Assembly (NCBI GenBank): GCA_937625935.1
Contig: OW569357.1
Coordinates: 62,001-126,000, forward strand
DNA: 64,000 bases
DNA from: Tetramitus jugosus
Lineage: Eukaryota > Protista > Heterolobosea
Reading direction: 5' to 3'
Below the pieces are notes generated by a model. The model worked only from the letters and a program-made list of their open reading frames with translations, did no database searches and was not told the origin of the DNA. Below are positions 583 to 18,497 of this stretch, one piece after another (positions within the stretch are counted from its first letter, which is position 1; each line of letters begins with the position of its first letter). The position numbers and the translations under genes are program-made.

Positions 583-3500
583 CTATTTGGATGAGAGGGC
601 AATGATAGATCGCAACCCATTCTGTTTCCTATTTTCGTGAACAATCTGTGCAGCGTCTCCACTGACTGTCAAGACTGCGTAGGCATGTCTTCGGGTCGTA
701 TTGTCGCTGCACACGTGGAATCTTAAATCATAATTTAACAGGCAGTTCATACCTAGTGCCTTCGCATGAGCCCTAATCACTGCGTTCGCCTCCATGACTA
801 ACTCTTGCTGGAAAGCACCAAAGAATTGTGTGTTGTCAGACTCCCTGACAAAGTGTTGGGTAATTTTACCAACAACTCGAATGATACGAGCACCTGCCAC
901 ATAGGACAGTGGAGTCATTGTCACATAAATGTTGTTCAGCCATTGTGTGTCTTCATCGACTTCGGTACTCTGTGAGATCGCTTTCATGGGGTTATCCACT
1001 ACTGCTTCTTCCATTGGGAACATTAAATCTTGTTCATTGATTGATACAACTTGAACTTTTGGTTGCTGAAATTTTTTTTCAATAAATGTTGGTACGGGCA
1101 TAAATACTTGATTGGGAAGCAGCACTGGATACACACTTTGCAGTGGTATTTTAGGTTGATGTTCAACGTTCAACATGGCCATTGCCTGGAATGTAATCAT
1201 TAATTCTGCCTCATCCGAAAACTGAACATCCGTCGTGATACCATTGACCGACACAGAGTACACGTTACGACTACTGTTGACAAACAATAACAGCTTAAAG
1301 GCAATCGAGCTGTACAAATCGTTGAATACAGCAGATATAAATTGTTGCTCATTCTTCTCTGTTGCTACAATCTTTGATAGATCATATCGCTTTTGCATAA
1401 AGATATTGTGCAGATTTGTGGCTTGGGTGCTGTTGAATCCTTCTGGTGTCGATGTTGACCTCAGATTTGAGAAGGTCACACCTCCAGGCAATACTGGATC
1501 AATAAGAGCAACCATCTTATCCTCATCTGTAACATCATCGATCTCTATCACATCTCCAGTTTCATTCATGAAATCAGTGGTAGCGAATTTATAATCCAAT
1601 TCGTCGTTGTCATCCAGAGAATCACTGTCGTCATCATCCGTGAGAACAGATGAATGTAAAAACTGAGATATCTGTTGTTGCATATCTTGTTTATAGGCAG
1701 CATTCATCTCTGCGAGTTGAACTCGTGCAAGTTGAATCTTTGCTGAATTCTTATTAACTGTAATGTTGAGAGGTGTGGGTTCAGGCAGACAACCCAGATG
1801 AACACCAGTACCTGTAACAGTGGCAACAATATATGAATCATCAACTGCAATATCATATGTTACGTTGAATACTGCATTTACATGATAAATGCGCATCTTG
1901 TGCAGCATTTGCTTGTGTAGATCGTACTCGATGAACGGCAACATTGTGCTGACAACCTTGGCATTACTTTCACCAACTTTGCGACTCTTCGTTCTGCATA
2001 TCCGAGCCTCTAAAAAGTGTTGACCAATGAATGGTACATTCGGAGGTTCACATGTAGAGAATATAATTTCAGGTACTTGAGCTTTCTTGCAATGATGACA
2101 ACTGAGTTGTTTTTTGGGCGCAAATGGATTGTCGTCCGATTGTAATACGTGGAAAATAGAATAAGGACACGACGATTTGGCCGTACTCATGTCGGATGAT
2201 GCATACATATTATCTGACAGAATGGCTGCTGTACCCTCCGCAGATAGAATACAAATGTTGCTCTTTGGATGCATATGTGCTTTTTCTGAATAACCAATAA
2301 TATGTGAGCATCCCAACATTCTTGCGTTTTCTCTCACTTCCTGACGCATTTCATTCCACCATTGATCCCTCTCCTTTCCCATTTGAGCAATTTTCACATC
2401 ACTCAACAGTTTCACAGCTCTGCACTGTACAACTGAAGCAACATATTTCACTTCGCTTGGTTCAAACACACGCATTGTGCACAGAGCCACGTCCTCTGAT
2501 GTCATTTTGAAAGCAGGTGCGCTCTCCACTGAAGTAGATAGCTGAGGAGATTTTGAGAGCGAGAGTTGAAAACCACCAGGTGATCCAGTGATGGACATTT
2601 TTCTGGGCAATGCAGCCGAAGTATCAAAAATGAGGTTCTGCAAATGAATTTCATTCAAACTCTGTATTTGTCGCTCCAATCGACACTCTGTGCCCATTCC
2701 TCTCACAACAATATTTTCACTCTCCAAATCAAATTGTTCATAGTATCCAACAACGGTATTGCAACCGGATTCACTCACTTTTTTGGCCATGAGTCGCTTC
2801 ACCTTGCTGATCAAATAGCAACAACAAATAACAACAATAATCGCTTAGGATCATACTCAAATAAATCCAACAAAATATTGTCAAGCAAAACACTTGACAT
2901 CTAAACACATACCCTGACAATTGAAACAACAACAGTTGACGTTGAATATTGGATGATCTAGATGACCGCATCATATCCTTCCAATAATCATGCTCCGGAT
3001 CATCATCAATCAACATTTCTTCAATCATATTAATCTTTGACATTTCATAATAGCAATTATTGTTTTGAGCATCTAAAACACTGCTCACACTACTGTTGTT
3101 ACTACTACTATTGGCACTCAATGGCGAAGAAAACATATGGCTAGCCATCAAACCTGAATTTACACTACTACTACCACCACCATTGTTCGGAACAATTGCA
3201 GCTGTGGACGAGAGAGCAGAATTTGGCGTGCTACTCAACGATCGCATCGTATTCACATAATTAGTAACCAACGTCTGATCATAATTCGAATAAAACTGAA
3301 CCTTGTGATGCCACTGACTAGCCAACGAGCCATCGACATGACCTCTCGCACTCTCCATTGCCAAAACATCCACTTTTATCGTCACCAATAATTCTCCGCA
3401 AATTCCCCGAAAACTATCGTAAATCGGCAACCATCCCGCCATCGTATGATGACCATGATGATGAGAATTCTGCTGTTGAAGAATCAACTGAGCATCTACA

Positions 3501-3772
3501 CACACCGTTCCAATCACATCATCCGAACTCAATATATCAGAGTCCCACAACACAAATTCAATCATGGTGTCCCTCAAATCAGAAATGTCAGTGACTTCAA
3601 TACGACACGATTCATCAAAAATGGGGTCCAACGTCTTTTTGCAAACTGATGTCGTGTACTCAAAGTGAGTTCCGAATTTGACTTGAACGTATGCATCAGT
3701 GAGGTTACTGGCACGGTCCATGACTGGCAGGTTTCTCGCGCCTTTGATGTGAATCTTGATGGTGGCGCCCAT
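583..3772 (-). CDS. C2CD5: C2 domain-containing protein 5 (C2CD5/CDP138-like), 2 exons
   Basis: N-terminal C2 domain (IKGARNLPVMDRASNLTDAYVQVKFG, WDSDILSSDDVIG). Intron 2807-2912 (GTATGT...CAG) joins FQLSG to KVKRLMAKKV...VVGYYEQFDLE...VRGMGT. Later C2CD5 blocks: RDQWWNEMRQEVRENARMLGC, LPFIEYDLHKQM. Confidence 0.88.
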
Positions 3773-4258
3773 GTTTGTGCAATGATGGACTCGTTTTTCT
3801 AAGAGATGTTTTTTTTTTGGCCCAATGTTGTGTGTAATTTTTTTTCTTTTCGAGAAGCTGTCATTTCAATGAATTATATTGGTTGGTTTGAGAGATTGAT
3901 TCCTTTGCAAGTGTAACTCAATTGCAACCATTCTCGAGTGGTGTCACAAAACTCCATAGGCTCTTACCGTGCCACATGAGAAGAATATTTTGTGATACTG
4001 TGGTCCAAAGAGATTTTCGTGAGGCTGTAATCCGAGTGCATGTAGGCCAAACTGATTCAAGCTTGTTAAGTTCTTCTTATCTACGATGATCGTATCAACC
4101 ACAATTTCTCCCTTCTTTCCATTCAAATGAACTTCGACCTTCTTTGGAACGAGAGACAATTTTTGAAGAAGCTTTTCAAGAATGCCAGGATCGTCCTCTT
4201 GCTCAACTGCCCATTATATTGTTATTAGTCCAGTTATAAAGGTTTATGAAGGAATAAT

Positions 4259-5218
4259 TTACAAGTGGGAGTGCAATATTTGAGCAATTTGAGGTTTCAT
4301 CTGCAGTTCGGCTGCTCTGGATTCCTCTTCCAATTTTTGTTGCTTCAGGTAACCCTTGTACGGTTCATCAATGAAAAAGTCCAATGAAGGGTTCTGTTTG
4401 CCTGGTATCACATGATACATGTCAATGTTAGGTACTTGTCCCTCCAATACTTCATCATCGATGAAAAAGTTGCCCGTATTGACTTCGCTCGAGCTGTCGA
4501 GTGTCAAAATCTGATAGGCCGCTTCGGCGACAATGTCTACGGTTCGAGATTGATTCATCAGCGTATCTCCACCGAGCACATTTGCTACAGCAGCTGTTGC
4601 AATACTCGTTCTTGGCCAGAGACTATTGACCGCAATATGATGCGGTTTGAGCTCTTCCGACAAACCCAATGTGCACATGCTCATATTGTACTTGGCCATG
4701 GTGTACGCAGTGTGGAGCTCGAACCATCTCGCATCCATGTTTAACGGTGGCGACATGGTCAAAATGTGTGCATTCTTGGATTTTTTCAGATGCGGCAAAG
4801 CGAGTTTACTGCACAAAAACGTGCCTCGCCCGTTGATGCTGTGCATCAGGTCGTAGCGCTTCATGGGTGTCTGTTCCAGGCCGGTCATGGCGATCGCGGA
4901 CGCGTTATTAATCAAAATGTCAATCCTTCCCCATTGCTTCACCACTTGATCAATGGCACTCTGGACTTGTTCTTCGCTGCGGATATCGCACACAATGGGC
5001 AATACACAATGAGAGTGACCACCATTGACCTGTTCAATTTCTTTGGCCGCAGTGTAGATGGTGCCTGGTAGGGTGGGGTGAGGCTCAGTTGTCTTGGCCA
5101 AGATGGCAATCTTGCACTGGTCATCTATGGCACATCTCTTGGCAATGGCGAGGCCAATTCCTCTGCTTGCTCCAGTAATGACAATGACTTGATCTCTGAG
5201 AGTTCTCTGTGCTGGCAT
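4259..5218 (-). CDS. HSDL2: Short-chain dehydrogenase/reductase, HSDL2-like, with C-terminal PTS1 (SHL)
   Basis: TGASRGIG Rossmann motif, AKTTEPHPTLPGTIYTAA (HSDL2 signature), NNASA and catalytic YTMAK. No SCP2 domain. First ATG is at 5218. Confidence 0.85.
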   Translation of the reverse strand: MPAQRTLRDQVIVITGASRGIGLAIAKRCAIDDQCKIAILAKTTEPHPTLPGTIYTAAKEIEQVNGGHSHCVLPIVCDIRSEEQVQSAIDQVVKQWGRIDILINNASAIAMTGLEQTPMKRYDLMHSINGRGTFLCSKLALPHLKKSKNAHILTMSPPLNMDARWFELHTAYTMAKYNMSMCTLGLSEELKPHHIAVNSLWPRTSIATAAVANVLGGDTLMNQSRTVDIVAEAAYQILTLDSSSEVNTGNFFIDDEVLEGQVPNIDMYHVIPGKQNPSLDFFIDEPYKGYLKQQKLEEESRAAELQMKPQIAQILHSHL

Positions 5219-5351
5219 CTTGTTGTTTTTGTTCGTTGTTTGCGCACGCACACTTGCTCAGATCTTTTTTTATCGCAACAATCCGATGAAGGAGTTTATG
5301 TTATGCGCATGAAAACCAATCATTTATTTAACATGGGTAAAAAGAGAGAGC

Positions 5352-8300
5352 TTATGACCACAGGTAGCAAACGGACGCGCCACAATAAGTTGGTAGAGTA
5401 CTCAAGTCAGGAACAATGTAGGAACAGGTCACTTTGGCTCCGGATCTACCATTTTGAGACCAATTACTCCAAATCCATTTGGTTGCTGATGTTGGAGTGA
5501 ATCCCAAGTTTGACCACTTGGACCACCCAGTTTGCCATTGATTGGCACTTTCCACTTCAAGTGCATTTGCCCAACCACCAGAGGAGAAATCACCGGACCA
5601 TGTTGGTCTCTGTGTTGGGGCACCTGTTTCACCAATGAACTGTGTGATACATTTCCAGTCAGAATTTGTGCGGATGATTCGATCTCCAAACATCATTTCA
5701 AATATGACACCACTATCACCACCATCGTTCTTTGCTTCTAGTGTAATGACATCTCCCGCCTTGACTGTAGCAGTGGCGAGCTTCACTACTCTCCACTCAC
5801 CTATCAATGGGCCAATGATAAGATCATCATTGATATAAACGGAAACATAATCATCGCCAGTAGTTCTAATTGTACCAGTTTCTCCAGATCGTTGAGTATT
5901 CACAGGATCACAAATAGCGTCAGTAATCTTCTTTTCGAAAGAATCACCGTCAAATACATTCCATGATACTGGGAAGACGCTACTGTCGATAGTATGGTCA
6001 TAACCCATCTTCTTCATTTGACTTATATCGAAGGTGTTCTGTATTTCAGAATCAATCGGTATGACAATGAGCCGACTGGCCCATCTTGCACCATTCAGAA
6101 TATTGAGAGAATTTGCTTCTGGCACAGCATCAGCACAAGGCATACATCTGGTTGTTGAACCATATGAACATGGAAGACTGCAAGGATAGTTAGCTCCGTT
6201 GTCTGTCAAGAGAACTATCACCTTTTCTTGGGACAATGACGAGACATATTGATATGCATCTGCTAGTGCAAACTTGTGGTTTGTGTTACCCTGGGAGGAT
6301 ACAGCTAGCGAGTTGGCAATTGAGTCATAGGTACTGTCATCTGTCGTCCAAGGACAGACAGTGAGAGCAGGGTCTTGCGCGAATGCTCTCAATGCCATGG
6401 CATTATTACTCGACCCTAATTTCACTCTACTATCAGCACTCATGTCCTTCAGGAATTTCTTTACCTTGCTTATTTGATTGAGACCAGATGCGATATCAGG
6501 CAAGAACAAAACTCTCAAATTTCCCTTTTTGCACTTGCAATTCTTGAATTTGATAAAGAGGGTCGCAGTTGCAGATGAAGTCGAATCTGTTGAGGAGGAT
6601 ATCTTATATGTAAATGTCAATGATTGACAACTGTCTGTATCAGAATTCGTGACCACAAAATTGGAACCTGAGACAGTCGGACAGAGAACTCCCGGAGAGC
6701 AGATGAAAGAATCCAATTTAACCCCAGAGCCCATCGGATCGTAGTCATTCTTAAGCAAGTTAGAACTAGCAAATGTTTGTGAAGATAAAGACTGATCCAT
6801 AAAGAGTAAATCATCGTTTGCTATTACCGGCTGCTTCGTATACTGGATAGTTATTGTGGCGAGCGCCTCTCCAGGCACACCAGGATCGTTATCACTCACT
6901 TTTATCACAGCTGTACATGATGTGAATGTGCTCGGTTTGGTAAAGAGCAGATATTTGTCATTCTTACCGCTCCTTGCTTGACTGGTGAGAGCAGAGCCAC
7001 AGGTTCCAGAACTCTGCACTCGGACAGTAAGTCTCTCAATATCTGTTAATCCATCCTGATCATTCACCTGAACATCAAGCAAATACTCTAGATAGTACTG
7101 CGAAGGATTCGAACCTGAAGGTTGGACACTAGGCTTTGTTAGGGTAAAGGTGTATGGTATTACAGGGCTGGGAATTCGATTGTCAACTGTAATGAACGCA
7201 CTGAAAGCAACTTTTTGTGTACCATCATCCACATAATACTCAATCTGCATAGTGTTCACACCCTTATCAGAAGCTGGGAAGGATATCGTCGTGGGAGGGG
7301 AGTTCCATGTTATTCCACTAGGTGTGGTCTTAGAAGAGAATACCAGAGAATCCCCATTATCGTCTGTGCAATAGTTAGGCAAATAGATGGAAGCAGGTTG
7401 ACCTTTGAACACATGGATGTCAATAGGACCACATGAGGGCGGAGAATTGATAAATTGAAGAAGAACTGTTCCAGTTATGGAGTTCAATTGACCATCTGTC
7501 AACTGATAAGTGAAGGTAGCATCGGTCTTGTAGTTCGCAGAAGTGGTTACTTGGATTCGCTGTTTGGCAGTGTCAGTAGAAACCACTAATTGCTGTCCAG
7601 AAGGAATTGATGTGATAACATTCACTGCGGTGATAGTAAGAGCATTACCATCGGCATCAACATAAGGACTATCCATTACGTCCACATAAAACACATTAGA
7701 TGCAGCCTGACGTTGTCTAGTTATGGTTAGGGGATTTGCCTTTTGAATCTGGGGTCGATTATTGGTCACATTGATAGTTACACTCGAGAGTGCGGAGTCC
7801 AGTAATCCATCAGTGCACTTGAAGGAGAAGGTATCTGCAACTAAGCACTGGGTAGTACATGGCGGATAAGATTGAGTGTTTGATGCAACATAACTGATCG
7901 CATTACCATTCACTATTAGTGTTCCAGCACTCATTGGAACATTCTTGAGTGAAGTTAAATCATATTGTTGAGATGAATAAAGGAGCAACAATGTTGCCTT
8001 ATCCGCTGTGTCTACGTCTTGACATCCCACAGTAAAGTTCTTAAATGATGAAACTCGCCAGACTAAAGAGCCAGAAGAAATGGAATTGGGTGACATCGTT
8101 GGCCTGTTATCGTAGTATGTGACTTGAATGGTAGCAGCTGACGAACTGCCAGGAAAATCAATAGCACTATATTGAATAGACAATGGTACATCCAAATCAG
8201 ATGCTGTTACCACCTTTGAGACTGTCAAGTTCTTATTGTCGCTTGTTTTTGTGACAGTCAGTCCTGAAGCGGAGAAGGTATCGATGAACAAAGGATCATT

Positions 8301-11300
8301 GTCCGCGTCAGTGTCATTGCTCAATGGATACACAACAAAGCTGGAGGTTTTCCAATGTTTTGTTACGTAATCATTGTTCGCAACAGGCTTGTGATTCACG
8401 ATAGTAATCGAAACACTCGACGATACGGTCGCTGCTCCATCAGTAGCTACCATGGTGAAACTCACTGCCGTCAGATCATACATTCCTGGCTTGTAAATAA
8501 TGAGATTGCCGTAGATATTCGAGGCTTGATAGGTAACTGTTCCATGAGTTGGATTTGTGATTGATGTCACATTGAGACGATCGTTGTCTGCGTCAGTAGC
8601 GTTTGCCAGTAGATTAATAGGAACTCCACTAACATAGCTTGTCCATGGAATACTTAGGACAATAGCTGGGACTACGGGAATACTGTTTTGTAGGTTAACA
8701 GTTAGAGAACCTTGAACTGAACTTTGTCCATCGGTTACCCAAAAATCAAGAACTTGGGGGTTCGTGGAAGTCACCACAGAGCGATGTTTCAGAGTAATAT
8801 TCTTCATATCTGACGTGAAACGAACATACTCCAAAATATTTGCGGCAAACGCCTGATTCTGTAACACCAAATTAGGCTTGTCTTGAGCATCCAAATCATT
8901 TGCGTAGCCGGCTACAATTGGGATATTGATAATTTGCCCCTGGTGAAGATTGACTGTGACCGACGAGACAGTTGGTTTGTTGTTCACGACATACACTCGA
9001 ATATCTGACGTCACCTGTGTCCAGCCATCTGTGAAGGTGAGACGAGCAATATCAGAGTTTCCAACAACAGTCTTGTCAGGCGAATAGACTAATTGGTTGT
9101 TCTGTATAGTAAAGTTACCTATCGTAGAACTGGTACGAGCTACCGTTACAAGAGTAACGTTGCTAGCGACGTCATCATCCTTCAATACATTACTCATATT
9201 GAGAGTAACAGGGTATCTCCAATGAACTTCCAATCGAACAGAACTGTCAAGATATGGAGGATTATTTAGAATTGTAACAGTGGCAGTCGAAGTCTGTTCG
9301 TCGCCTGTATCGGTGACTCCAAAAGTAACGATAGTTGTTCCCACAAATCCATTCGAAGGAGTGATCAACATCTTCTTTAAATCAGACGAAATGGAACAGA
9401 AACTCAGGTCATTTCTGCAGTAGCTCACATAGATATGATTCTGATCCTCAGGATCAGCGTCATAGGTATCCTTTGAGACGTTAAGCGAAACAACGCCTCC
9501 CATTTGTTTTAATTCAGTCCAATGCATGGTCTTCGTGTATGTCGGCGGCACAGGAGGATTATTGTAAACAAAAACTGATGCCCTGGCCGGTGTGCTATCC
9601 AACCCATCTGAGATTGTATAAGTGAACGGACTAGTGCCTCTGAATAAACGTGGAGGAGTATAGCGAAGCATTGTTCCGTTATTGTTCAAAACAGCATTCA
9701 CTGTTTGAGTAGCAGCAGAAACGATCCACAGTTTGTTCAAATCAAGAGCATCGTTATCGGTGAAGTTTGACAAAACAGGCAACGACACATTGGAAAGTGA
9801 GAAATGGACCTGATACAAATCTTCAAACGAATTCTTGCTGTATGGTGCAGTATTTTGGACGGTAATGTCCACTGATGGCGAAATAGCTGTAATGCCATCA
9901 GTTACACTCAGTGAAACGAACGAGTATCCCGCGGCATAACCTGTGGAGGGAGCAACAATTCTAAAAGCTGTCGAATTCACAAGTACAGCACTACTAATCA
10001 CTTGAGGATTACTGGCAGTAACGCTTGTAATTTGAACTAGATCACCATCGGGATCGATAAAGTAGTCTAACACCTGATCTAACACTTTTCCATTTGGTGC
10101 CATCACTTCCCTCCAATGGAAAGAGTAACTCTTGCGCTGAACTACGGGAACCTGATTCGTCACTCTCATGGTGACTAAAGCTTTAATCTCTTCAACACCA
10201 TCAGAAACTGTGTACAAGAAATAAAAGGTGCCAATAACCTTTGGAACAATGGAAAAGTGTACCGTTGTATCATTGACAATTGAAAGTGTAACACTCGGAG
10301 AGGTGGTCGTAGCATTAGTAATACGTAAATGATCTCCATCAATATCCGTTGTGTTCGAAATCAATTGAATATCGATGCCATTGAGAAGAGCTCTATGAGA
10401 TCTATTCAACGTTAAGTCAGCTGCTGTTGGAGGCGTATTGTATACCAAAAGTACGAGACGAACAACTTGCCAAGAGTTACCACTAGTAACATTCATTGTT
10501 AGGTAATCACGTTCCAGGCTCAGTTTCGTTTGTTCGTAGAAAATCGACTTCTTATCAGCTCCAATTGTAACATTACCATATTGAGGGGCTGTAAGAATAC
10601 TCTTCACTTGAAGGGTGCTGTAGGGAATGAGAGCTGTATCCACATCAATAGAAATTGATTTACCAGCCAGAGCGTCTTTCCAAAGGATTGTTGTATACAA
10701 GAAGTAAGGATCTTGAGCCAAATCTGGAACAGTCATTGTTATAAAGTAAGTAGAGTTACTGACTCCATCTGTGACAATATAAGAAAAAACTTCTGTGCCC
10801 GTTGCATTAATAGGCTTGTAGTAGATGGAGTCTGCGTCCTCCAAAAATACTGTTCCTTTGAAACCCGGAGTGATTTTTGATCCCATAAAAATGGCAATAG
10901 AACTTTGATCAAATGAATCAATATCTGCCGCACTTCTTAGCACATTGACTGATACTCCTGTTTCTATTTCCACCCAATGCAATGACAAACTGAAGTTCTT
11001 GCCAGTTGGGAGATTGTTGAAAGATGTAATACTGACTGTTCCCTGTGCAGTTGTGGCACCATCAGATAACGTGTATTTAAAACTATCGCTACCAACAAAG
11101 TTACTCACGCTATACTTGATCTGCTCGACACCAGAGCCATCAGATACCCGAGTAGCAATACCATGACTTGGTTGAATGAAGTCCAGAGCAATTAGATCTC
11201 CATCAGAATCGTATTGACTGTTGTACAGTTTGAAGAGAGGTTCTTCTGTCATTAACTGCCTCCAATGCTTAACAATGCTTGAATTGACCGCGACTGGAAT

Positions 11301-14300
11301 GTTGTTGTTGGTGATATCTAAGGTAACACTCGCGGGTGAACTCGTAGATACTTCGTCGGTGATTCTATAAGAGAAGGTCACCAAACCAATAAAGGGCGTG
11401 GCACCACTGACGTTGTATTGGATCAAACCGGAAGCAGCACTAAGTATTTGAGCTTTTCCTGATGAAGGTTGAGTGATGTCATACAGCGATAGAACATCAA
11501 AGTCTGCATCGGTGTCATTCGCTAGAACATTGAATGAATACGGACCATTCCTCCAATGAAGATTCCGATACACGTCTGCGACTGCTTTTGGTGCGTTGTT
11601 AGTCATCGTGATCGTAATATTTTGGAGCACAGTAGAGATACCGTCAGTGACAGCACAACGAACAAAGTCTTGGCCGACAAAATTCTTCTTGGGTGTGTAA
11701 AATAGTTGGTTTGGAGCTATGATTGAAGCATTTCCATTGCTAGGAGGCACTACTATCTGCGAGAGAAATACTGTATCTTGAGGATCACTGTCTGAGGCAT
11801 TGACAAGCACATTAAGTGCCCTACCAGTTTTATATGTAGCCCATGGAATGTTAAACATTACCGAAGGTACAACTGGTGGATGATTGTAAACAACAACGGG
11901 AAACTGTAAATTGACTGATGACCACCCGTCTGTTATGTTGAGAACAAAATTGGCGCTTCCGAGAAAGTTCGGAACTTGCTTGTATCTCACTTTAAGATTC
12001 GATTCCACAGAGACATTCCCACTCACCACGCCGGATATTGACAAAGTGTCTCCATCTAGATCATACATCATGGATGAGGTATCAATCACATAGCCTCCAT
12101 TACTATATGACCAATGCATTTGAGGAGGAGTGATTATAGCATTCAACTGAGGATAGTTGTTATTGACTGTGAGACTGAAGGTTGCAGAAGTATTCGCGAG
12201 TCCATCGGTAAATACAACGTCAAACACAAAACTTCCAACAAATCCGCGAGTCGGAATGAAAGTGATATAGCCATCTGAGGAAAGAGTGGCATTTCCTCCT
12301 ACAGCAGGAACGTTTCTGAGTGCAATTGCAATTACGGAATCCTCGCTATCCGGATCAGATGTGCCAGCTTCAGTAACCGCACGCAATACAGCACCTGCAA
12401 CTCCAACACTCTTCCAGTTGTAGCCTCGATTTACTGCCTTCGCAGTTGGATTTTGATTGTACACGTTAACGGTATAGGTCATGAGAGCACAATCTAATCC
12501 ATCACACATTTGTACAACAAAAGTATCATTACCCAGAAAGCCGATTGGTTGAGTATATACAACCTCAATCTTATTCATGGATGTGTCAATTACTGCTGTT
12601 CCAAATCCAGAACTGTACACTCTATATGAAATTGAGTCCGAATCTGCATCCACAGGTGTGAGTGTAGATGATAATTCAAAGCGAGTTCCTGTAGCTTGTC
12701 GCGACCAATGAATTTTCTTGAAAGTGGAGAAGGCAGCAGGAACATTCGGGTTTCGAACGATAATAGTGATATTCGCTGAAACAATTTCGATTCCATCAGA
12801 AAGGCTATAGGTGAAGTATTGTGTGCCCTTCCACGAGCCAGAAGGAGTAAACTGGAATGAAGAACCGACAAGTGCTAATGTTCCATTAAAGTTACCTGGT
12901 GTACTTGAACTATTCACTTGAATTAGATCACCATCTAAATCATACGCAGACGGTATGACATTAATGCTGACAGGACTTGAACTTCTCCAGTGTGTGCTGA
13001 TGGTAGAAACTACAGGAGTAGGTTTACGATTGATAATCAACACATCCACCGTTCCTGGGGTATACTTCTCACCATCGGTCACCTGATAGACAAATGAGTC
13101 TGGACCTAAGTAACCTGAGGAGGCAGTGTAATGCAAAAACTGATCACGTCCTAACCTGACAATGGACAATATTCCGTGTAGTGGGTCACTCAATATGCGC
13201 GATATCGTTACAACATCTTGCTCTGGGTCTGTTGTGTCAGCCAATACATCCAAGTCGAATGAAGCACTCCTCCAATGTACAGTCACATTCTTAGGTTTTG
13301 TGACAGGCGGAAAATTGAGTACTGTCAATGTTACGCTACCAACAAGATCGCTGTAAGCAATACCATCAAATATTCGGTAACTAAACTGGTCAGACCCTGT
13401 GAAATTGGTTTTTGGTGTGTACTGAATCGTCCGACCATTAATAATACTAACAACACCATTACTAGGATCAGAAACAGATGTGATTTGCAGTAAATCCCAA
13501 TCACCGGGATCTTCGTCGATATCATTGTCCAAAACAGAGAGAGTAGTTGCCCTGTTCCATGACACAGAGTACGTATCATTGACGACTACGGGGACTGTGT
13601 TTACAACGGATATGACTACAGATCCTGTTGCCAATGCATTGTCTACATCGGATATGGTATATGAGAAGAGATCGTTTGTCACAGCTCGAGGAGCATAGTA
13701 TCGAATACCATCTGATATGATTGTTGCTTGAACTCCTGTAACTGGCACTGTACAATTTATCAATCGAATAGTATCATTATTAGGATCGTAGTCATTGGCC
13801 ATCACTGTCAGATCAGCTGTGAATCCCTTTTTAATTGTGTATGTGTCCTTGACAGCAACTGGTGGAGTATTTTGCACAACTACGGTCACCGTAGCGGATG
13901 TGGTTTTAACGTCCTTGGGTAATTGTTGTCTGTCTGATATAGTGTACATGAATGTGTCATTTCCCAAGAATCCACGCGCAGGAGAATAACTGATGGTTGA
14001 ATTATTGATCCAACGAACAACTCCCTTGTTGATTGTTTCAAATTGACTGAACTCGACAATGTCAAAAATGTCATCATTAATATCGTAATCGTTGTCAGTG
14101 GGCTTAAAGCTCTTTGCGATATTTTTCTCTACAATCACTGTATCATCAACTGCAACAGGAGCATCATTCTCAATTGATAAGAATATAAATCCATCAGTAC
14201 GATCGTCCACATCACTAACCGTAAATCTGAGCACTTCAGGACCGAGAGCCTCACTATAAGGTACATAGGACACAGTATAGTTATAAAGTGTCAATTCTAC

Positions 14301-15706
14301 AAAGGCTCTGTCCAAAAATAACTCAGTTTGTGTGTAGGCAGTCGACAGAAGCGAATAGCTACCCAAAATTGAAGCAGTGCCCATGGTAATCCTTGGTTCA
14401 TCCAATTTGTCATCATCATGATAATACAGTGGAATAAGAACGCCTTGGGAATTCTTTGACACCCTCAATGTAATATTATGAGTGGTCGGTGGTTGATTCT
14501 TCACATAAATAATAAAGTATGAAGAAGAAACATTGGTCTGATCTGTACAAGTATATTCAAACGAATCTGAATATGTCTCTGCTGTCAAATAAGGCTCATA
14601 ACGAACAAGTTTTCTGTCATTTGAAACAATGAGACCACCCTTGCCCACACCATACACCTCATCAATAAACAACTCATCCATATTGTCATCGACATCATCA
14701 GCCAAGATATCTAATTGACTAGCAACATACTTTCTCACTTCAAACACGCTTGGATGTGCAACAGGAGGCGTATTCACTACATGGATCGTCAACAATGCAC
14801 TCGCCAAATCATATCCATCGGTTACTGTAAAGTTTCTGACCTCCCATCCGACAAAGTTCGGCTCTGGTGTATAGTACAGCAACAAACTGTTATTACTCAA
14901 CGTGAGTGAACCTTTCTCCGTTGAACCAGCAACAACAAAAGGTTCCTCAACCAAGATCATCTCGTCATCATCAGGATCACTAATCGCAAAATTGAAACCA
15001 TCATTGAAAGCAAACAAATCCAATGAGACATTCTTGCTATTCTTGAGGATCTCTACGTGAATATCAGTACATGATGGATTTCTGTTGAGCACTGTGACTT
15101 GAATTGAACTTGTGGCAGAAGCTTTGTCGTTGGTGGCAGTGTAATTGAATGAATCAAAGCCACTGTAGCCCTTCAATGGAGTATAGGCAACTTTTCCTTG
15201 GTCAAGAATACGAGCTATACCATGATGAGGTTGTTGTATGGATACGAGAGTCAAGTTACCTCCTCGGCTGTCGACATCGTTCCTCAACGGGAACAACACT
15301 GTTTCGACATTTTTCAAAACTGAAACATGGTCACTATAAGCACAAAACATGTAGTCGTGAGCAAAAGGCGCCAAAAGCAAAGCTACTAGGGGAAAAAAAA
15401 CTTAGCCAAAAACAACACATACGGTTTAAGTGATGGTGGATGATAACCCACACCAGTGCTAATGAGAGCAATAAGTGCTCCAGTCGTAACAGCCACTACG
15501 ACACTCAAAATAATTCCAAAAATGGCTTGATGAACAGCTGTGCTCTTCACGAGAGACATGTTCACTTTTTTCTCATCGACAACAGCGACGGACTCTCCAA
15601 TAATAAGTGAATTGTCTTTTCCGTCTGGCACCAACTCTACGGGTGCAGCTTCTTCAATCTCTTTGACCTCCCATCGGGTAAAGATCTTGAATGGACTATT
15701 GGACAT
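5352..15706 (-). CDS. Giant (~3,421 aa) type II membrane adhesin-like protein: N-terminal TM anchor, ~30 Ig/cadherin-like (tandem-95/Big_9-type) repeats, vWA domain, C-terminal lectin-like beta-sandwich; 2 exons
   Basis: Exon 1 (15423-15706) encodes the TM helix AIFGIILSVVVAVTTGALIALI. Intron 15334-15422 (GTATGT...TATAG) restores HPPSLKP|DHVSVLKN, matching the repeat start consensus. Repeats of ~95-100 aa follow NxxPxAxxD...VLxNDxDxDGD...YxP..GFxGxDxFxYxxTDG. vWA spans ~5905-6520 (VLFLPDIASG, GNTN, VIVLLTDN). Terminal domain: TGDDYVSVYIND...NDGGDSGVI...TNSDWKC...KWIWS. Confidence 0.85.
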
Positions 15707-16109
15707 GGTCTAAGCTTACGGAAGACTGCTTTTCGTTTGTTTTGTGAGATACTTTTGAGTTCTTTGTTGCACTCTTCTTGTTTGAATCGAACAAGGGGTT
15801 TCAGGAACAAGAGTGAGGCACGAGTTCGATAAAAGATTCAGTTTGTTGAGATGTATCTTATCACACACACAAAACCTCACTTAGGGGTAAGGGGTAAGAG
15901 TGCACTCTCCGAAACAGTCAATTCAAGGTCGTCGTATCTCACATCAAACAGCACCTTTCAAGGAAAATATGGGACCCCGGTGCATGAGTCATCCATGTCA
16001 AGAACCCCCATCATTGAGGGATAACACGATGGTGCTGTTGACGTTTCCTGTCACGCAGCGCTCATCTGGCGGGAATTATTCACATCGGAAATAAAGAAAT
16101 AGCCACAAA

Positions 16110-18497
16110 ATGGAGAAAAAAAAGAAGATCAATTTGAAGGAACGATTTGTGGATGCAACAACCTACGATCTTGTCAATCATATAGCAGTTGAACCAAGTT
16201 GGAAAAAGGCAAAAACTCGCATCGCATCGCTCAGTGATCACAACCTCAATGACGATGAAATTTCGCTCAAAAACGCACTCCACAAATGCCTGCGTTGTGG
16301 ATTGACATTTTGTCTCGATGAAGCCTCGATGAAGGGTTACACGACACTTGTGCAAACAATTCTTGATCGTTTCGTGTCATGTGAACTCACATCAACCGTG
16401 CTGCATAATCATTGTGATCACAAATATGATGAGAGCAGAAAACTGGGTCATCATAGTAGTGCAATTGAGGAGAATGCCAACAACAATACTAGCAACAGTG
16501 ATCCAATCGCGAATGATTGGTTGGTTCAAATGTTTCTTGACAATCAATTCAAAATTGATGAGCTTTCACTCATGGATATGCTCACGGATGGCATGAAGCG
16601 CATTCTTCGGGGGAGGGAGCAAAACAGAAGAAACCCAATCGAAGACAGTGAAAGTGAGAGTGAGAGTGATGAAGATGATGAAGAGGTGGTAAGCAGACAA
16701 ACAATGGATTCCAAATGGTGGATAGACGGAATGGAACGGTTGCGGTGCTTGTACGAAAAGTGGAGCGAAGAACCGTATCTCAGTATTGTGATTCAAAACG
16801 AGGAATTCAAGAAATTTTTGCTGAGATTGTTTCACATTTTCACCAACGTAATCCAGACAAAGGAACAATTGGTGAAATCGTATCGCATCTATTACTTGTC
16901 TCTCCCATTTGAAATCGTGCGTCTGACTCTGTTTTTCAATTACTACGGAGAACTCGAGAGTGAAAACATGGAGAAGCTCTTTGTCAGTGTCCCGCTCATT
17001 TATTATAGTCGATTGACTCAACATTTAGCATTGGATCTGATCCGTGACGAGTTCTTGGCCAAACGTGAGCAATACAACAGCGTTGAGGACATTTGGAGGA
17101 ATAGTACATTGACTGTTGCTCTCTATGTCATACTGAATTCTGCAAGATATGTTCCACATATTAAGCAATTACCATCATATTTGTTCCCAATTCGTGGCAC
17201 GATTGACGATTCCTATTCTTCGTTGATATACTTGTCGCTATTGCGTTTCGGAATGCGTTTCGACAATTCTGTTCAAGAAGCGCACAAGGCAGATATTCAG
17301 CTAATTCTGACTCAAGGACTGAAAAGTAACAATGTTGATAGAAGGATATTATGTATCTTTATGCTTGACAAGCTATGTTGCTCTGTATTTGCGGAAATGT
17401 TTGAATCATTGAAACCGATATTATGGTATGTGGTGAAGGAAACAACAACAAACTCAGATGAATTAGGAGAGATTGCTGGGGGATTGACGACGCAAGCTGA
17501 AAGAGCCCTTCAAAAACAAGACTTTTCTCTCGCACGTTCGATTATACAGTTCATATTCGACATTGCCTTTGAGTTCAGGGACGACTCTGATTTGAAATTT
17601 TGCTATGATTTATCCCTTTTTCTGAGCAATCCAAATGTAAAGATCGAGTCTGACAAGTTGGTTGTCTATCTGAACTCACTAACAACCACGTTGGAGAACA
17701 GAGAGAAAGAATATTTTTCAAATCCGGATGATGAGTCAAGAGACAAGCTCACTCAAGTATTCTGTGCACTTGAATTTATCCCAGAAATGACAGTTCCGCT
17801 TGACGATGACACTTTGTGTAGATTCCATAGTGTCCTATATCGTTGTCTTCCTGTTGAGTCAATCAGCTACGTTTGTTGGAGTATCTATACCAAAGCGATT
17901 GAAAACGACTTTCTTGATGGCATGGAGGCAGCTCACAAAAGATCAACCTCCAATACCATGAATTTGTTTCATTACACTCTCTCATTGATATGTCAGGGAT
18001 CTGTAGATCCCCACAAGCTGCACACTGGAAGGAAATTATGGCTCCACTATTATCAAGAACAAACACGTGAAGAACTGGAGCTACTTCATGAGCAACTTCT
18101 TCCACCCTATCTTGAAAAGCTAATCGAGGGATTGTTCATCTCAACAGACGATTTTTCGAGACAAGAAGCATTTCTCTCTCTGGGTCTGTTGTATTGTGGT
18201 GCTCCTGATATGGTTCGAAATTCGAGCTCTGATATAGTAGAAAACTACCTTGAATACTTTGATGGATACCTTTCAAACATAACTCAATCAAAACCAAATA
18301 ATGTGGCATGTTGGTTGGCGTTCTTGGAGCTCAGCTATGATCACTTATCTGCGGACGACGAAGACGATATATCGCTCATACTGGAACAATTGTTTGGCAG
18401 TGAAGTGTATCTCAAGAACCAACAAGTCTTCCAACCGCTAACTTCCCGCTTGCTCGTGGCATCCTGTTCTCAGAAACCCAACGAACAAGGAGAATAA
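16110..18497 (+). CDS. Uncharacterised 795-aa leucine-rich helical protein (possibly ARM/HEAT-like)
   Basis: Long uninterrupted ORF with an A-rich ATG context, amphipathic helical pattern and an acidic patch. No diagnostic motif recognised. Confidence 0.6.
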   Translation: MEKKKKINLKERFVDATTYDLVNHIAVEPSWKKAKTRIASLSDHNLNDDEISLKNALHKCLRCGLTFCLDEASMKGYTTLVQTILDRFVSCELTSTVLHNHCDHKYDESRKLGHHSSAIEENANNNTSNSDPIANDWLVQMFLDNQFKIDELSLMDMLTDGMKRILRGREQNRRNPIEDSESESESDEDDEEVVSRQTMDSKWWIDGMERLRCLYEKWSEEPYLSIVIQNEEFKKFLLRLFHIFTNVIQTKEQLVKSYRIYYLSLPFEIVRLTLFFNYYGELESENMEKLFVSVPLIYYSRLTQHLALDLIRDEFLAKREQYNSVEDIWRNSTLTVALYVILNSARYVPHIKQLPSYLFPIRGTIDDSYSSLIYLSLLRFGMRFDNSVQEAHKADIQLILTQGLKSNNVDRRILCIFMLDKLCCSVFAEMFESLKPILWYVVKETTTNSDELGEIAGGLTTQAERALQKQDFSLARSIIQFIFDIAFEFRDDSDLKFCYDLSLFLSNPNVKIESDKLVVYLNSLTTTLENREKEYFSNPDDESRDKLTQVFCALEFIPEMTVPLDDDTLCRFHSVLYRCLPVESISYVCWSIYTKAIENDFLDGMEAAHKRSTSNTMNLFHYTLSLICQGSVDPHKLHTGRKLWLHYYQEQTREELELLHEQLLPPYLEKLIEGLFISTDDFSRQEAFLSLGLLYCGAPDMVRNSSSDIVENYLEYFDGYLSNITQSKPNNVACWLAFLELSYDHLSADDEDDISLILEQLFGSEVYLKNQQVFQPLTSRLLVASCSQKPNEQGE

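What the first reader, a model, noticed from the sequence alone, without database searches (positions are those of the whole stretch)
5352..15706. Giant bacterial-style fibrillar adhesin re-anchored as a eukaryotic type II membrane protein
Seen: ~3,421 aa with a ~60-aa cytosolic N-tail, one TM helix, ~30 diverged ~95-100-aa repeats (DxDGD and TDG motifs), then vWA and a lectin-like domain at the distal tip. It has many N-x-S/T sequons and a spliceosomal intron exactly between anchor and stalk. Known: N-terminal retention + Ca-binding Ig-like extender + distal vWA/sugar-binding tip is the layout of bacterial RTX/LapA-type adhesins, whereas animal cadherins are type I. Inference: a convergent or horizontally acquired adhesin whose type I secretion modules were replaced by a signal-anchor. 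It could project on the order of 100 nm for prey capture, substrate attachment or cell-cell adhesion. The intron and eukaryotic neighbours argue against contamination.
Basis: partly seen in the sequence, partly recalled or inferred. Interest (0 to 1): 0.82.

Follow-up and report, generated by a model that had tools for sequence, protein, structure and literature searches.

The report
Giant stalked lectin adhesin of amoeba
A soil amoeba related to Acrasis and Naegleria expresses a real 3,421-residue surface protein: a membrane anchor at one end, about 30 bead-like repeats, and a sugar-binding tip; it belongs to an old, undescribed gene family of these amoebae and is not a recent bacterial import.

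Summary
A two-exon gene on the minus strand (ATG 15706, 89-nt GT-AG intron 15334-15422, stop 5352-5354) encodes 3,421 aa. It has a ~60-aa N-tail, one 23-29-aa hydrophobic anchor, 29-30 Big_9/tandem-95 repeats, a VWA-fold domain and a C-terminal CBM67/POL-type lectin. Contigs from three soil metatranscriptomes skip exactly the intron, and one spans the whole 10.4-kb mRNA.

This is not a one-off re-anchored bacterial adhesin. The genome holds at least 12 paralogues, which this scan had already flagged at least 7 times on other pieces of the same genome. Naegleria, Willaertia and unnamed eukaryotic sequences carry homologues with the same N-terminal anchor motif, a collinear array of 29 detected repeats and the same Cys-rich VWA. 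The whole architecture therefore predates the split of these Heterolobosea.

Bacterial affinity exists only at domain level, for Big_9 and the CBM67-like module. A domain tree puts all eukaryotic repeats on one side of one branch, so the direction of any ancient transfer stays open.

Features special to this gene and its sister on contig 12 are a degenerate MIDAS, the CBM67-like tip and the intron.

Most likely function (inferred): a long-reach, Ca-dependent glycan-binding adhesin or prey receptor.

Interest is moderate.

The parts
5308..15799 (-). Extent of the mRNA as seen in a single 10,429-nt soil metatranscriptome contig, with the intron removed
   Evidence: table 8. X1 record 1 lies on 11000-15333 and 15423-15799, with 5,692 further letters before 11000. 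That puts its other end near 5308.
15423..15706 (-). Exon 1 coding part: aa 1-94 plus two bases of codon 95
15527..15706 (-). N-terminal tail of ~60 aa, predicted cytosolic
   Evidence: The N-flank is net positive and the C-flank is about neutral. Topology was not tested directly.
15545..15562 (-). Conserved tail motif N-M-S-L-V-K (family pattern N-x-S-L-[LVF]-K), just before the anchor
   Evidence: the motif is present in the window protein, its paralogues, the N. gruberi, N. lovaniensis and Willaertia proteins, P0032 and P0017.
15458..15526 (-). Single hydrophobic signal-anchor (A61-S83)
   Evidence: Kyte-Doolittle peak of 2.56; uncharged run of 29 aa that starts 60 aa from the N-terminus.
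15334..15422 (-). Spliceosomal intron, 89 nt, GT..AG, phase 2, lying between anchor and stalk
   Evidence: a joint at 15333/15423 in 3 RNA runs, while the DNA-like run X12 spans the intron; same position and phase in the contig-12 paralogue.
5352..15333 (-). Exon 2 (3,326 codons plus the stop at 5352-5354)
6588..15333 (-). Stalk of 29-30 tandem Big_9 / tandem-95 (cadherin-like, Ig-like) repeats of ~97 aa, covering aa 86-3010. The first repeat begins in exon 1.
5910..6542 (-). VWA-fold domain with a shortened Cys-rich insert
   Evidence: Pfam VWA_2 scores 23.8 bits, below the cut-off of 27. The family profile matches collagen VI and integrin I domains. The AF2 model has pLDDT 78.7, and Foldseek finds 322 PDB matches at E<=0.001; every row shown is a VWA-type domain.
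6483..6497 (-). Degenerate MIDAS: D-I-A-S-G in place of D-x-S-x-S
   Evidence: alignment. D16, T87 and D114 are invariant, but both Ser positions are lost here.
5388..5891 (-). C-terminal CBM67 / Pleurotus-lectin-type beta-jelly-roll lectin domain
   Evidence: Profile A1 matches POL 6T0Q at E 2.5e-37 and the SaRha78A CBM67 (3W5M) at 1.5e-10. The AF2 model has pLDDT 76.3. VIA-align gives Z 9.8 to 3w5n 167-299 and Z 9.8 to POL 6kbj.
5850..5855 (-). Asp-Asp pair at the position of the Ca2+/sugar-site aspartates of CBM67-type lectins
   Evidence: D40 is invariant in 26 sequences. PMC11512411 states that two conserved Asp bind the Ca2+ needed for sugar binding.

Best explanation
This is a functional, expressed gene of a heterolobosean soil amoeba. 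It encodes a giant single-pass membrane protein with its N-terminus inside the cell (type II).

Anatomy. A short cytosolic tail carries a family-conserved N-x-S-L-[LVF]-K motif. It is followed by a signal-anchor helix. Outside the cell come 29-30 Big_9 (cadherin/Ig-like) domains with acidic loop and linker motifs. These would form a rod roughly 120-150 nm long if extended (inferred from ~4-5 nm per Ig-like domain, from memory). At the far end sit a disulfide-rich VWA-fold domain that has lost its metal-site serines and a CBM67/POL-type lectin that keeps the Asp-Asp calcium site.

Mechanism (inferred). The stalk lifts the lectin tip above the amoeba's own coat. There the tip binds glycans in a Ca-dependent way, for example rhamnose- or galactose-containing polysaccharides of bacterial or fungal prey, or of the substratum. 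The VWA acts here as a scaffold rather than as a metal-dependent binder.

Evolution. The gene is one member of an old heterolobosean multigene family in which the stalk and anchor are conserved and the tip varies. The tip is CBM67-like here and in the contig-12 sister gene. It is a C-type lectin in long Naegleria proteins. Other paralogues have unassigned tails.

Shown: the gene model, splicing, expression, domain identities and family membership. Inferred: topology, length, Ca binding, ligand and cellular role.
For: Splicing and a full-length transcript appear in 3 soil metatranscriptomes. An independent 3,421-aa gene call exists on an RNA contig.

Domains: Big_9 and tandem-95; VWA fold; CBM67/POL lectin.

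Conserved Cys pattern in the tip: C2, C4, C121, C125, C133, C136 and C211 are invariant or nearly so. This argues for an oxidising, extracellular location of the C-terminal part.

The single long uncharged segment starts 31-60 aa from the N-terminus in all family members.

Family: at least 10 paralogues share the anchor and at least 8 share the VWA. Named homologues occur in N. gruberi, N. lovaniensis, N. fowleri and Willaertia magna.

Repeat arrays are collinear with Willaertia: 16 of 29 best matches lie on the diagonal (Spearman 0.80). For P0126 the figure is 0.85, and for bacterial proteins about -0.19.

The organism is heterolobosean. Its Rpc34 is 54% identical to that of Acrasis kona and 40-41% to those of Naegleria and Willaertia.

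Between strains there is rough purifying selection: 16 nucleotide differences in 11000-15333, of which 7 change an amino acid. This assumes that P0145 comes from the X1 contig of the same length.
Against: No topology predictor or experiment was available. The positive-inside signal is weak.

A conserved N-x-S in the tail would be a glycosylation sequon if the tail were luminal.

The MIDAS is degenerate, so the VWA may not bind ligand.

The lectin's sugar, and even its sugar binding, are untested. Identity to POL and CBM67 is only 16-22%.

Sequons are not enriched.

No functional data exist for any family member in the papers I could search.
Confidence: 0.65

Rival explanations
1. A bacterial RTX/LapA-type adhesin gene was acquired by horizontal transfer and re-anchored, with its type I secretion modules replaced by a eukaryotic signal-anchor.

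As a recent event this is very unlikely. As an ancient event, in which a Big_9 array (perhaps with a VWA) entered an early heterolobosean and was then domesticated, it stays open.
For: Big_9/tandem-95 proteins are overwhelmingly bacterial among the 391 hits. A bacterial-type protein with a Big_9 array followed by a C-terminal VWA exists (P0037). The closest relatives of the CBM67-like tip sit in secreted enzymes with bacterial-type modules such as RTX repeats, TSP3_bac and Bact_surface_Ig-like. Acrasid genomes are reported to be rich in HGT (PMC11589745).
Against: The full architecture, including the anchor, is shared with Naegleria and Willaertia and is collinear repeat by repeat. Eukaryotic repeats sit on one side of a single branch (SH-aLRT 88) and are not scattered among bacterial ones. 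The HW motif occurs 4-12 times per eukaryotic protein against 0-1 in bacterial ones, and K+R is 5-7% against 1-3%. There are no RTX repeats. GC equals that of the surrounding genome. The tree is unrooted and poorly resolved, so no donor can be named.
Confidence: 0.35
2. The protein is not retained on the cell. The hydrophobic segment is cleaved, or the ectodomain is shed, and the rod becomes part of a secreted coat, matrix or cyst/sorocarp wall.
For: Small residues (G-V-G, or S-A-G in Naegleria) follow the hydrophobic stretch and precede a conserved proline-containing stretch (P-P in most members). VWA-domain proteins are up-regulated in the aggregation matrix of Acrasis (PMC11589745).
Against: The uncharged stretch is 26-30 aa long and starts 31-60 aa from the N-terminus, which is unlike cleavable signal peptides. 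A sequence motif in the N-tail is conserved across genera, which argues that the tail is kept and used.
Confidence: 0.15
3. The family serves cell-cell adhesion or self-recognition, for example during aggregation in acrasid-like amoebae, rather than prey or substrate binding.
For: It is a large paralogous family with variable tips. The organism is closest to the aggregative Acrasis. Alleles between strains differ at 39 residues.
Against: Non-aggregative Naegleria and Willaertia keep the family. Transcripts are assembled full-length from bulk soil RNA, which fits trophic cells. CBM67-type modules bind sugars such as L-rhamnose that are typical of microbial walls (PMC11186620, table).
Confidence: 0.15
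4. Artefact: bacterial contamination, mis-assembly or a dead gene.
For: The domain names are bacterial-style.
Against: The intron is spliced in RNA. Neighbours on the same contig are eukaryotic. The ORF is intact over 10 kb. An independent transcript-derived protein has the same length.
Confidence: 0.01

Closest known systems
Uncharacterised 'tandem-95 repeat' / hypothetical proteins of Naegleria lovaniensis (P0008, P0009), N. fowleri (P0005, P0143), N. gruberi (P0049) and Willaertia magna (P0006)
   Same: Same family. These share the N-terminal N-x-S-L-L-K motif plus signal-anchor. The array has 29 detected repeats and is collinear with this one. HW motifs are present. The VWA has a Cys-rich insert (PCSC...C-x-PC[AS]). 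Identity is 26-28% over 75-95% of the length.
   Different: They have a canonical MIDAS (D-G-S-G-S). After the VWA they have a further ~170-aa stretch of unknown kind and, in Naegleria, a C-type lectin. They lack the CBM67-like domain. No intron was seen at the anchor/stalk junction of the paralogues checked in this genome; their own gene structures were not examined.
Bacterial fibrillar / RTX adhesins (LapA, MpIBP and similar; grammar in PMC8286594, PMC12077191)
   Same: A tandem Ig-like stalk (Big_9 is listed there as a stalk domain). Adhesive domains (VWA and sugar-binding modules) lie at the end far from the anchor. Giant size and acidic Ca-type motifs are shared.
   Different: No RTX nonapeptides, no T1SS signal and no N-terminal retention module. 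It has a eukaryotic signal-anchor, an intron and conserved disulfide cysteines. Its repeats form a separate group from the bacterial ones sampled.
Dictyostelium Sib proteins (SibA-E; PMC9453864, PMC2651865)
   Same: Adhesion receptors of a free-living amoeba that combine a VWA domain with repeats otherwise known from bacterial adhesins.
   Different: Sib proteins are type I. They have a C-terminal TM with GxxxG and a talin-binding NPxY tail, only four repeats, and belong to a different supergroup. No homology between the two was tested here.
Pleurotus ostreatus lectin POL and CBM67 of Streptomyces avermitilis rhamnosidase SaRha78A (PDB 6T0Q/6KBJ, 3W5M/3W5N)
   Same: The tip domain has the same fold and a detectable sequence relationship. 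The Asp-Asp calcium motif is kept.
   Different: Here there is a single copy at the end of a 3,200-aa stalk. The sugar is unknown. A review table lists CBM67-like lectins in eukaryotes only for fungi and oomycetes (PMC11186620).
Animal cadherins and protocadherins
   Same: Ca-type acidic motifs at the junctions of tandem beta-sandwich domains, and a role in adhesion.
   Different: They are type I with a catenin-binding tail and belong to a different Pfam family. No VWA or lectin tip.

Membership tests
Big_9 / tandem-95 repeat proteins (PF17963, NF012211) | Tandem ~90-100-aa domains that match the models above their curated cut-offs | tested here: met
   Big_9 scores 572 bits against a cut-off of 23.6, in 20 stretches. 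tandem-95 scores 412 bits against a cut-off of 90. An own HMM finds 29-30 units.
Heterolobosean anchor-Big_9-VWA family (undescribed) | N-terminal N-x-S-L-[LVF]-K motif followed by a 26-30-aa uncharged segment and a nearby proline | tested here: met
Heterolobosean anchor-Big_9-VWA family (undescribed) | Repeat array collinear with other members, and HW motif in the middle repeats | tested here: met
   Spearman 0.80 and 0.85; 11 HW against 0.5 expected.
Heterolobosean anchor-Big_9-VWA family (undescribed) | VWA with a conserved Cys-rich insert after the beta4 'TDG' strand | tested here: met
   The insert is shortened here, but P120, C121, C125, C133, P135 and C136 are kept.
VWA domain (PF00092 / PF13519) | Rossmann-like VWA fold | tested here: met
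   AF2 model pLDDT 78.7; Foldseek probability 1.0 to integrin I domains, CMG2, MIC2 and VWF A3. The family profile matches collagen VI at 8e-96 and integrin alpha-1 at 6e-20. The Pfam score of this copy alone is below the cut-off, 23.8 against 27.
VWA domain (PF00092 / PF13519) | MIDAS D-x-S-x-S ... T ... D | tested here: not met
   D-I-A-S-G: both Ser positions are lost, while T87 and D114 are kept. The sister C12 has D-V-A-K-G and P0126 has D-V-A-I-S.
CBM67-like lectins (POL type) | Beta-jelly-roll fold and sequence relationship to CBM67/POL | tested here: met
   E 2.5e-37 and 1.5e-10 for the profile; Z 9.8 with 118-119 aligned residues.
CBM67-like lectins (POL type) | Ca2+-dependent sugar binding through two conserved Asp | not testable with these tools
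   The Asp-Asp pair is present (D40 invariant). Binding itself needs experiment.
Fibrillar adhesin (definition of PMC8286594) | Tandem stalk domains plus at least one adhesive domain placed distal to the anchor | tested here: met
   Anchor at the N-terminus, adhesive domains at the C-terminus.
Fibrillar adhesin (definition of PMC8286594) | Bacterial cell-surface protein | tested here: not met
   Eukaryotic gene.
RTX / LapA-type T1SS adhesins | C-terminal RTX nonapeptide repeats and a T1SS signal; N-terminal retention module | tested here: not met
   No HemolysinCabind or related Pfam hit at E<=0.01. The C-terminus is a lectin and the N-terminus is a TM anchor.
Dictyostelium Sib family | Type I topology with a C-terminal TM (GxxxG) and NPxY cytosolic motifs | tested here: not met
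   No C-terminal hydrophobic segment in this protein or in 8 paralogues.
Type II (N-in) single-pass membrane protein | Uncleaved signal-anchor with a cytosolic N-terminus | tested here: inconclusive
   Hydrophobic length and position fit. The charge bias is weak. The Cys-rich VWA and lectin argue that the C-terminal part is outside. No predictor or experiment was available.

The most novel reading that the evidence does not exclude
Heterolobosean amoebae, including the pathogen Naegleria fowleri, possess an ancient and so far undescribed class of type II-anchored 'fibrillar adhesins'. A conserved ~30-domain Big_9 stalk and a cytosolic N-x-S-L-L-K tail carry interchangeable lectin tips: CBM67-like, C-type and others. 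These proteins would act as long-reach receptors for prey or host glycans. They would be a eukaryotic counterpart of bacterial fibrillar adhesins, founded by an ancient bacterial Big_9 gene.
Probability: 0.3. Interest if true: 0.7.

Novelty: new variant of a known kind. Interest (0 to 1): 0.5.

Why it matters
Receptors by which free-living amoebae grip surfaces and recognise prey are poorly known outside Dictyostelium. This family offers candidates in a different supergroup. They are giant rods with lectin tips, are expressed in natural soils, and have close homologues in Naegleria, including N. fowleri.

The family also shows that the stalk-plus-tip design of bacterial fibrillar adhesins has a long-lived eukaryotic form with a signal-anchor, and that tips have been exchanged within it.

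The practical gain is a testable set of adhesion or phagocytosis receptor candidates and a defined new domain architecture for annotation. It is not a surprise at the level of principle, because amoebal surface proteins with bacterial-like repeats plus a VWA are already known (Sib proteins).

Tried and rejected
- Word search of the tip among proteins of 1,830-5,820 aa: nothing at E<=0.001. This genome's own proteins seem absent from that collection, so the blank says little.
- ESM Atlas search with the tip: no usable hit.
- Exhaustive HMMER search with the 411-aa tip: only 22 hits, best E 3e-16. Most cover the lectin module, inside multi-domain secreted enzymes; one family member (P0126) matches the VWA part.
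- Foldseek on the lectin model alone was weak, with best E 0.056 to POL. The profile search and VIA-align settled the assignment.
- Sequon enrichment was rejected as evidence.
- The positive-inside count was inconclusive.
- The domain tree is poorly resolved, with 69 of 129 inner branches open. Only the single eukaryote/bacteria split is used from it. Its nearest-neighbour pairing (8 of 29 with the same index) is weaker than the pairwise scores.
- Tails of the 2,420-aa paralogues, of the contig-29 paralogue and of P0126 match nothing in Pfam or the PDB.
I removed that row, did not send it to any other tool, and re-ran without it.
- Exons were searched separately by reference. The joined 3,421-aa model was built only inside local scripts, for hydropathy, repeat finding and comparison with P0145. 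It was not sent to any search or fold tool.
- Literature searches found no paper that describes this family.


Full report
**The gene is real and spliced.**
The window holds a 3,342-codon open frame at 5352-15380 on the minus strand. Just upstream in the same direction is a 106-codon ORF that starts with ATG at 15706. Reading the sequence shows a GTATGT donor at 15422 and a TTATAG acceptor at 15334. They join the two frames in phase 2.

I laid the contigs of three soil metatranscriptome runs from three studies, plus one DNA-like run, on 11000-16400.
- All three RNA runs contain a contig that skips exactly 15334-15422 (CT..AC on the plus strand).
- The DNA-like run has a contig that runs through the intron.
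- One RNA contig of 10,429 nt covers the whole message, from about 5308 to 15799.

A protein in the public collection, called on a contig of that same length, has 3,421 residues. That is exactly the length of my spliced model, and it differs from it at 39 positions. In the stretch 11000-15333, 16 nucleotide differences give 7 amino-acid changes. That is the pattern of a gene under moderate purifying selection. This is a rough estimate, and it assumes the protein comes from that contig.

**The setting is eukaryotic.**
GC content equals that of the rest of the window. Neighbours are eukaryotic genes: RNA polymerase III Rpc34, ODR4-like, RhoGEF, a P450 and an SDR.

**Anatomy.**
- *Tail and anchor.* The first 60 residues are hydrophilic. 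A61-S83 is the only true hydrophobic segment.
- *Stalk.* Pfam finds Big_9 (E 7e-176), Cadherin_5 and Cadherin_4. NCBIfam finds the tandem-95 repeat. A profile iterated on the protein itself finds 28 strong units, one weak and one further unit, head to tail from residue 86 to 3010. The period is about 97 residues. The consensus begins V.N.pP, has an acidic nD.D....DgD loop and ends YtvTDG.
- *VWA.* After the array comes a 210-aa region that Pfam scores just under the VWA_2 cut-off. Its paralogues score well above the VWA cut-off. A profile of the family region hits collagen VI, integrin I domains, MIC2 and anthrax-receptor VWA domains in the PDB. An AlphaFold model (pLDDT 78.7) has 322 Foldseek matches at E<=0.001; every match shown is a VWA-type domain.
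- *Lost metal site.* The metal site is degenerate: D-I-A-S-G stands where most other members have D-[GS]-S-[GS]-S. Only this gene, its sister on contig 12 and the metagenomic P0126 have lost the serines.
- *Lectin.* A profile of the last ~170 residues and its 24 nearest relatives matches the Pleurotus ostreatus lectin at E 2.5e-37. It matches the CBM67 module of a Streptomyces rhamnosidase at 1.5e-10. The model (pLDDT 76) aligns to both at Z 9.8. The Asp-Asp pair that binds the sugar-site calcium in this lectin class (PMC11512411) is present.
- *Sequons.* N-x-S/T sequons number 56 against 44 expected. They are not evidence of anything.

**It is one of a family, and the family is old.**
The 26-Mb genome holds at least 12 giant Big_9 ORFs.
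- Ten share the anchor region of exon 1, and eight or more share the VWA.
- Only the contig-12 gene shares the lectin (44% identity). It also shares the long N-tail (81% identity) and the intron, at the same position and phase.

Outside this genome the word search returned 391 hits at E<=1e-10 (only the best 120 were listed). The listed hits are mostly bacterial. Among the top hits are proteins of Naegleria fowleri, N. lovaniensis, N. gruberi and Willaertia magna, a EukProt protein and two metagenomic ones. The hits with intact N-termini begin with the same N-x-S-L-[LVF]-K motif, a Gln, and a 26-30-aa uncharged segment followed shortly by a proline (two predicted models start after the anchor). 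They carry the same VWA with a Cys-rich insert, and most canonical-MIDAS members show a PCSC...C-x-PC[AS] pattern.

Repeat by repeat, the window protein is collinear with the Willaertia protein. Both have 29 detected units, and 16 best matches lie exactly on the diagonal (Spearman 0.80). It is also collinear with P0126 (0.85). It is not collinear with bacterial proteins (about -0.19).

The Rpc34 neighbour places the organism in Heterolobosea. It is nearest to Acrasis kona (54% identity) and further from Willaertia and Naegleria (40-41%). Anchor, ~30-unit stalk and VWA were therefore already assembled before these lineages split.

**Bacterial affinity.**
It is real at the level of domains.
- Big_9 is mainly bacterial.
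- A bacterial-type protein with a Big_9 array followed by a VWA exists (P0037).
- The nearest relatives of the lectin module sit in secreted enzymes with RTX, TSP3_bac and bacterial Ig-like modules.

Other evidence points away from a recent transfer.
- A tree of 57 eukaryotic and 75 bacterial repeats separates the two by one branch (SH-aLRT 88; shuffles need about 43 changes).
- The eukaryotic proteins carry an HW dipeptide 4-12 times, against 0-1 in bacterial ones.
- They have 5-7% Lys+Arg against 1-3%.
- There is no RTX repeat.

So a single origin followed by internal growth is supported, and a recent transfer is excluded. The direction of an ancient transfer cannot be read from an unrooted, poorly resolved tree.

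**How it most likely works.**
*Shown:* an expressed giant protein with one N-terminal hydrophobic segment, a long Big_9 array, a VWA fold without its MIDAS serines, and a CBM67-type lectin at the extreme C-terminus.

*Inferred:*
- The segment is an uncleaved signal-anchor with the N-tail in the cytosol. It is too long and too far from the N-terminus for a signal peptide. The tail motif is conserved across genera. The conserved cysteines of the tip need an oxidising compartment.
- The array forms a rod of the order of 120-150 nm, stiffened by calcium at the acidic junctions. This follows by analogy with bacterial Ig-like extenders and cadherins; the per-domain length is from memory.
- The lectin binds microbial or substratum glycans in a calcium-dependent way.
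- The MIDAS-less VWA serves as a pedestal.

The family keeps anchor and stalk and varies the tip. The tip is CBM67-like here, a C-type lectin in N. lovaniensis, and unassigned in other paralogues. This fits receptors tuned to different ligands. Prey capture or substrate adhesion seems more likely than self-recognition. Non-aggregative Naegleria keeps the family, and full-length transcripts come from bulk soil RNA. This last point is not settled.

**Comparison with what is known.**
The design matches the grammar of bacterial fibrillar adhesins, in which Big_9 is a stalk domain and VWA a common adhesive domain (PMC8286594). The gene fails the defining features of RTX/LapA adhesins.

The nearest eukaryotic precedent is the Sib family of Dictyostelium: a VWA plus four bacterial-like repeats, but type I with an NPxY tail (PMC9453864, PMC2651865). 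This protein has no C-terminal anchor.

The true family members in Naegleria and Willaertia are annotated only as hypothetical or 'tandem-95 repeat' proteins. I found no paper that describes them.

A review table lists CBM67-like lectins in eukaryotes only for fungi and oomycetes (PMC11186620). Its presence at the tip of an amoebal stalk is a small extension of that range.

**Procedural notes.**
- The scan had already flagged paralogues of this gene on other pieces of the same genome at least seven times, and had flagged the tip, the HW motif and the intron of this gene.
- Exons were searched separately by reference. The joined model was used only in local scripts.
That row was dropped and not sent elsewhere.
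- Read laying was given 5,401 letters.

**Verdict.**
This is a well-supported member of an old, undescribed heterolobosean family of anchored, stalked lectin proteins. It is of moderate interest and its function is still untested.

Noticed in passing
L014 (G000:C31:132500-142000): 809-3118, 3061-5106, 5049-7928, all +: A paralogue of the family lies in three consecutive, slightly overlapping ORFs of 770, 682 and 960 aa instead of one. This could reflect frameshifts, a pseudogene, introns or a truly split gene. An earlier follow-up in this genome (s1-541441) describes a split giant receptor that may be this locus.
   Followed up: no
window 15545-15562 (-) and the same place in paralogues and homologues: The motif N-x-S-L-[LVF]-K, followed by a Gln just before the anchor helix, is conserved from this amoeba to Naegleria and Willaertia. 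It is either a cytosolic sorting or partner-binding signal, or a sequon if the tail were luminal.
   Followed up: partly
window 15719-15799: The soil RNA contigs carry an 8-nt insertion after 15719 in the 5' UTR. They end at 15799 with 10-18 letters that do not fit the genome. This may be strain variation or a further upstream exon.
   Followed up: no
window 11000-16400 (runs X1, X2, X4): Soil metatranscriptomes from separate studies hold this 10-kb transcript at about 99% identity. This amoeba, or a very close strain, is therefore active in the soils sampled by at least three studies.
   Followed up: partly
window 16110-18497 (+): A divergently oriented 795-aa ORF with no Pfam domain starts about 400 bp from the adhesin's ATG. 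Contigs over 16128-16400 show a second, diverged variant with 11 differences and a 6-nt deletion.
   Followed up: no
P0005, P0143 (Naegleria fowleri), P0008, P0009 (N. lovaniensis): The long Naegleria homologues end in a C-type lectin domain (scanned here for P0008; precomputed Pfam labels for P0005 and P0009). They are unstudied candidate adhesins or receptors in a genus that includes a human pathogen.
   Followed up: no
L005:6874-7503 (+) and the equivalent tails of the contig 17, 44, 24, 8 and 16 paralogues: The 2,420-aa paralogue class shares a conserved ~200-aa C-terminal tail after the VWA. For the contig-2 copy, neither Pfam nor a PDB sequence search finds a match.
   Followed up: partly
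window 15320-15334 (-): A second AG lies 14 nt downstream of the acceptor that is used, and it would be out of frame. All three RNA contigs use the in-frame acceptor at 15334.
   Followed up: partly
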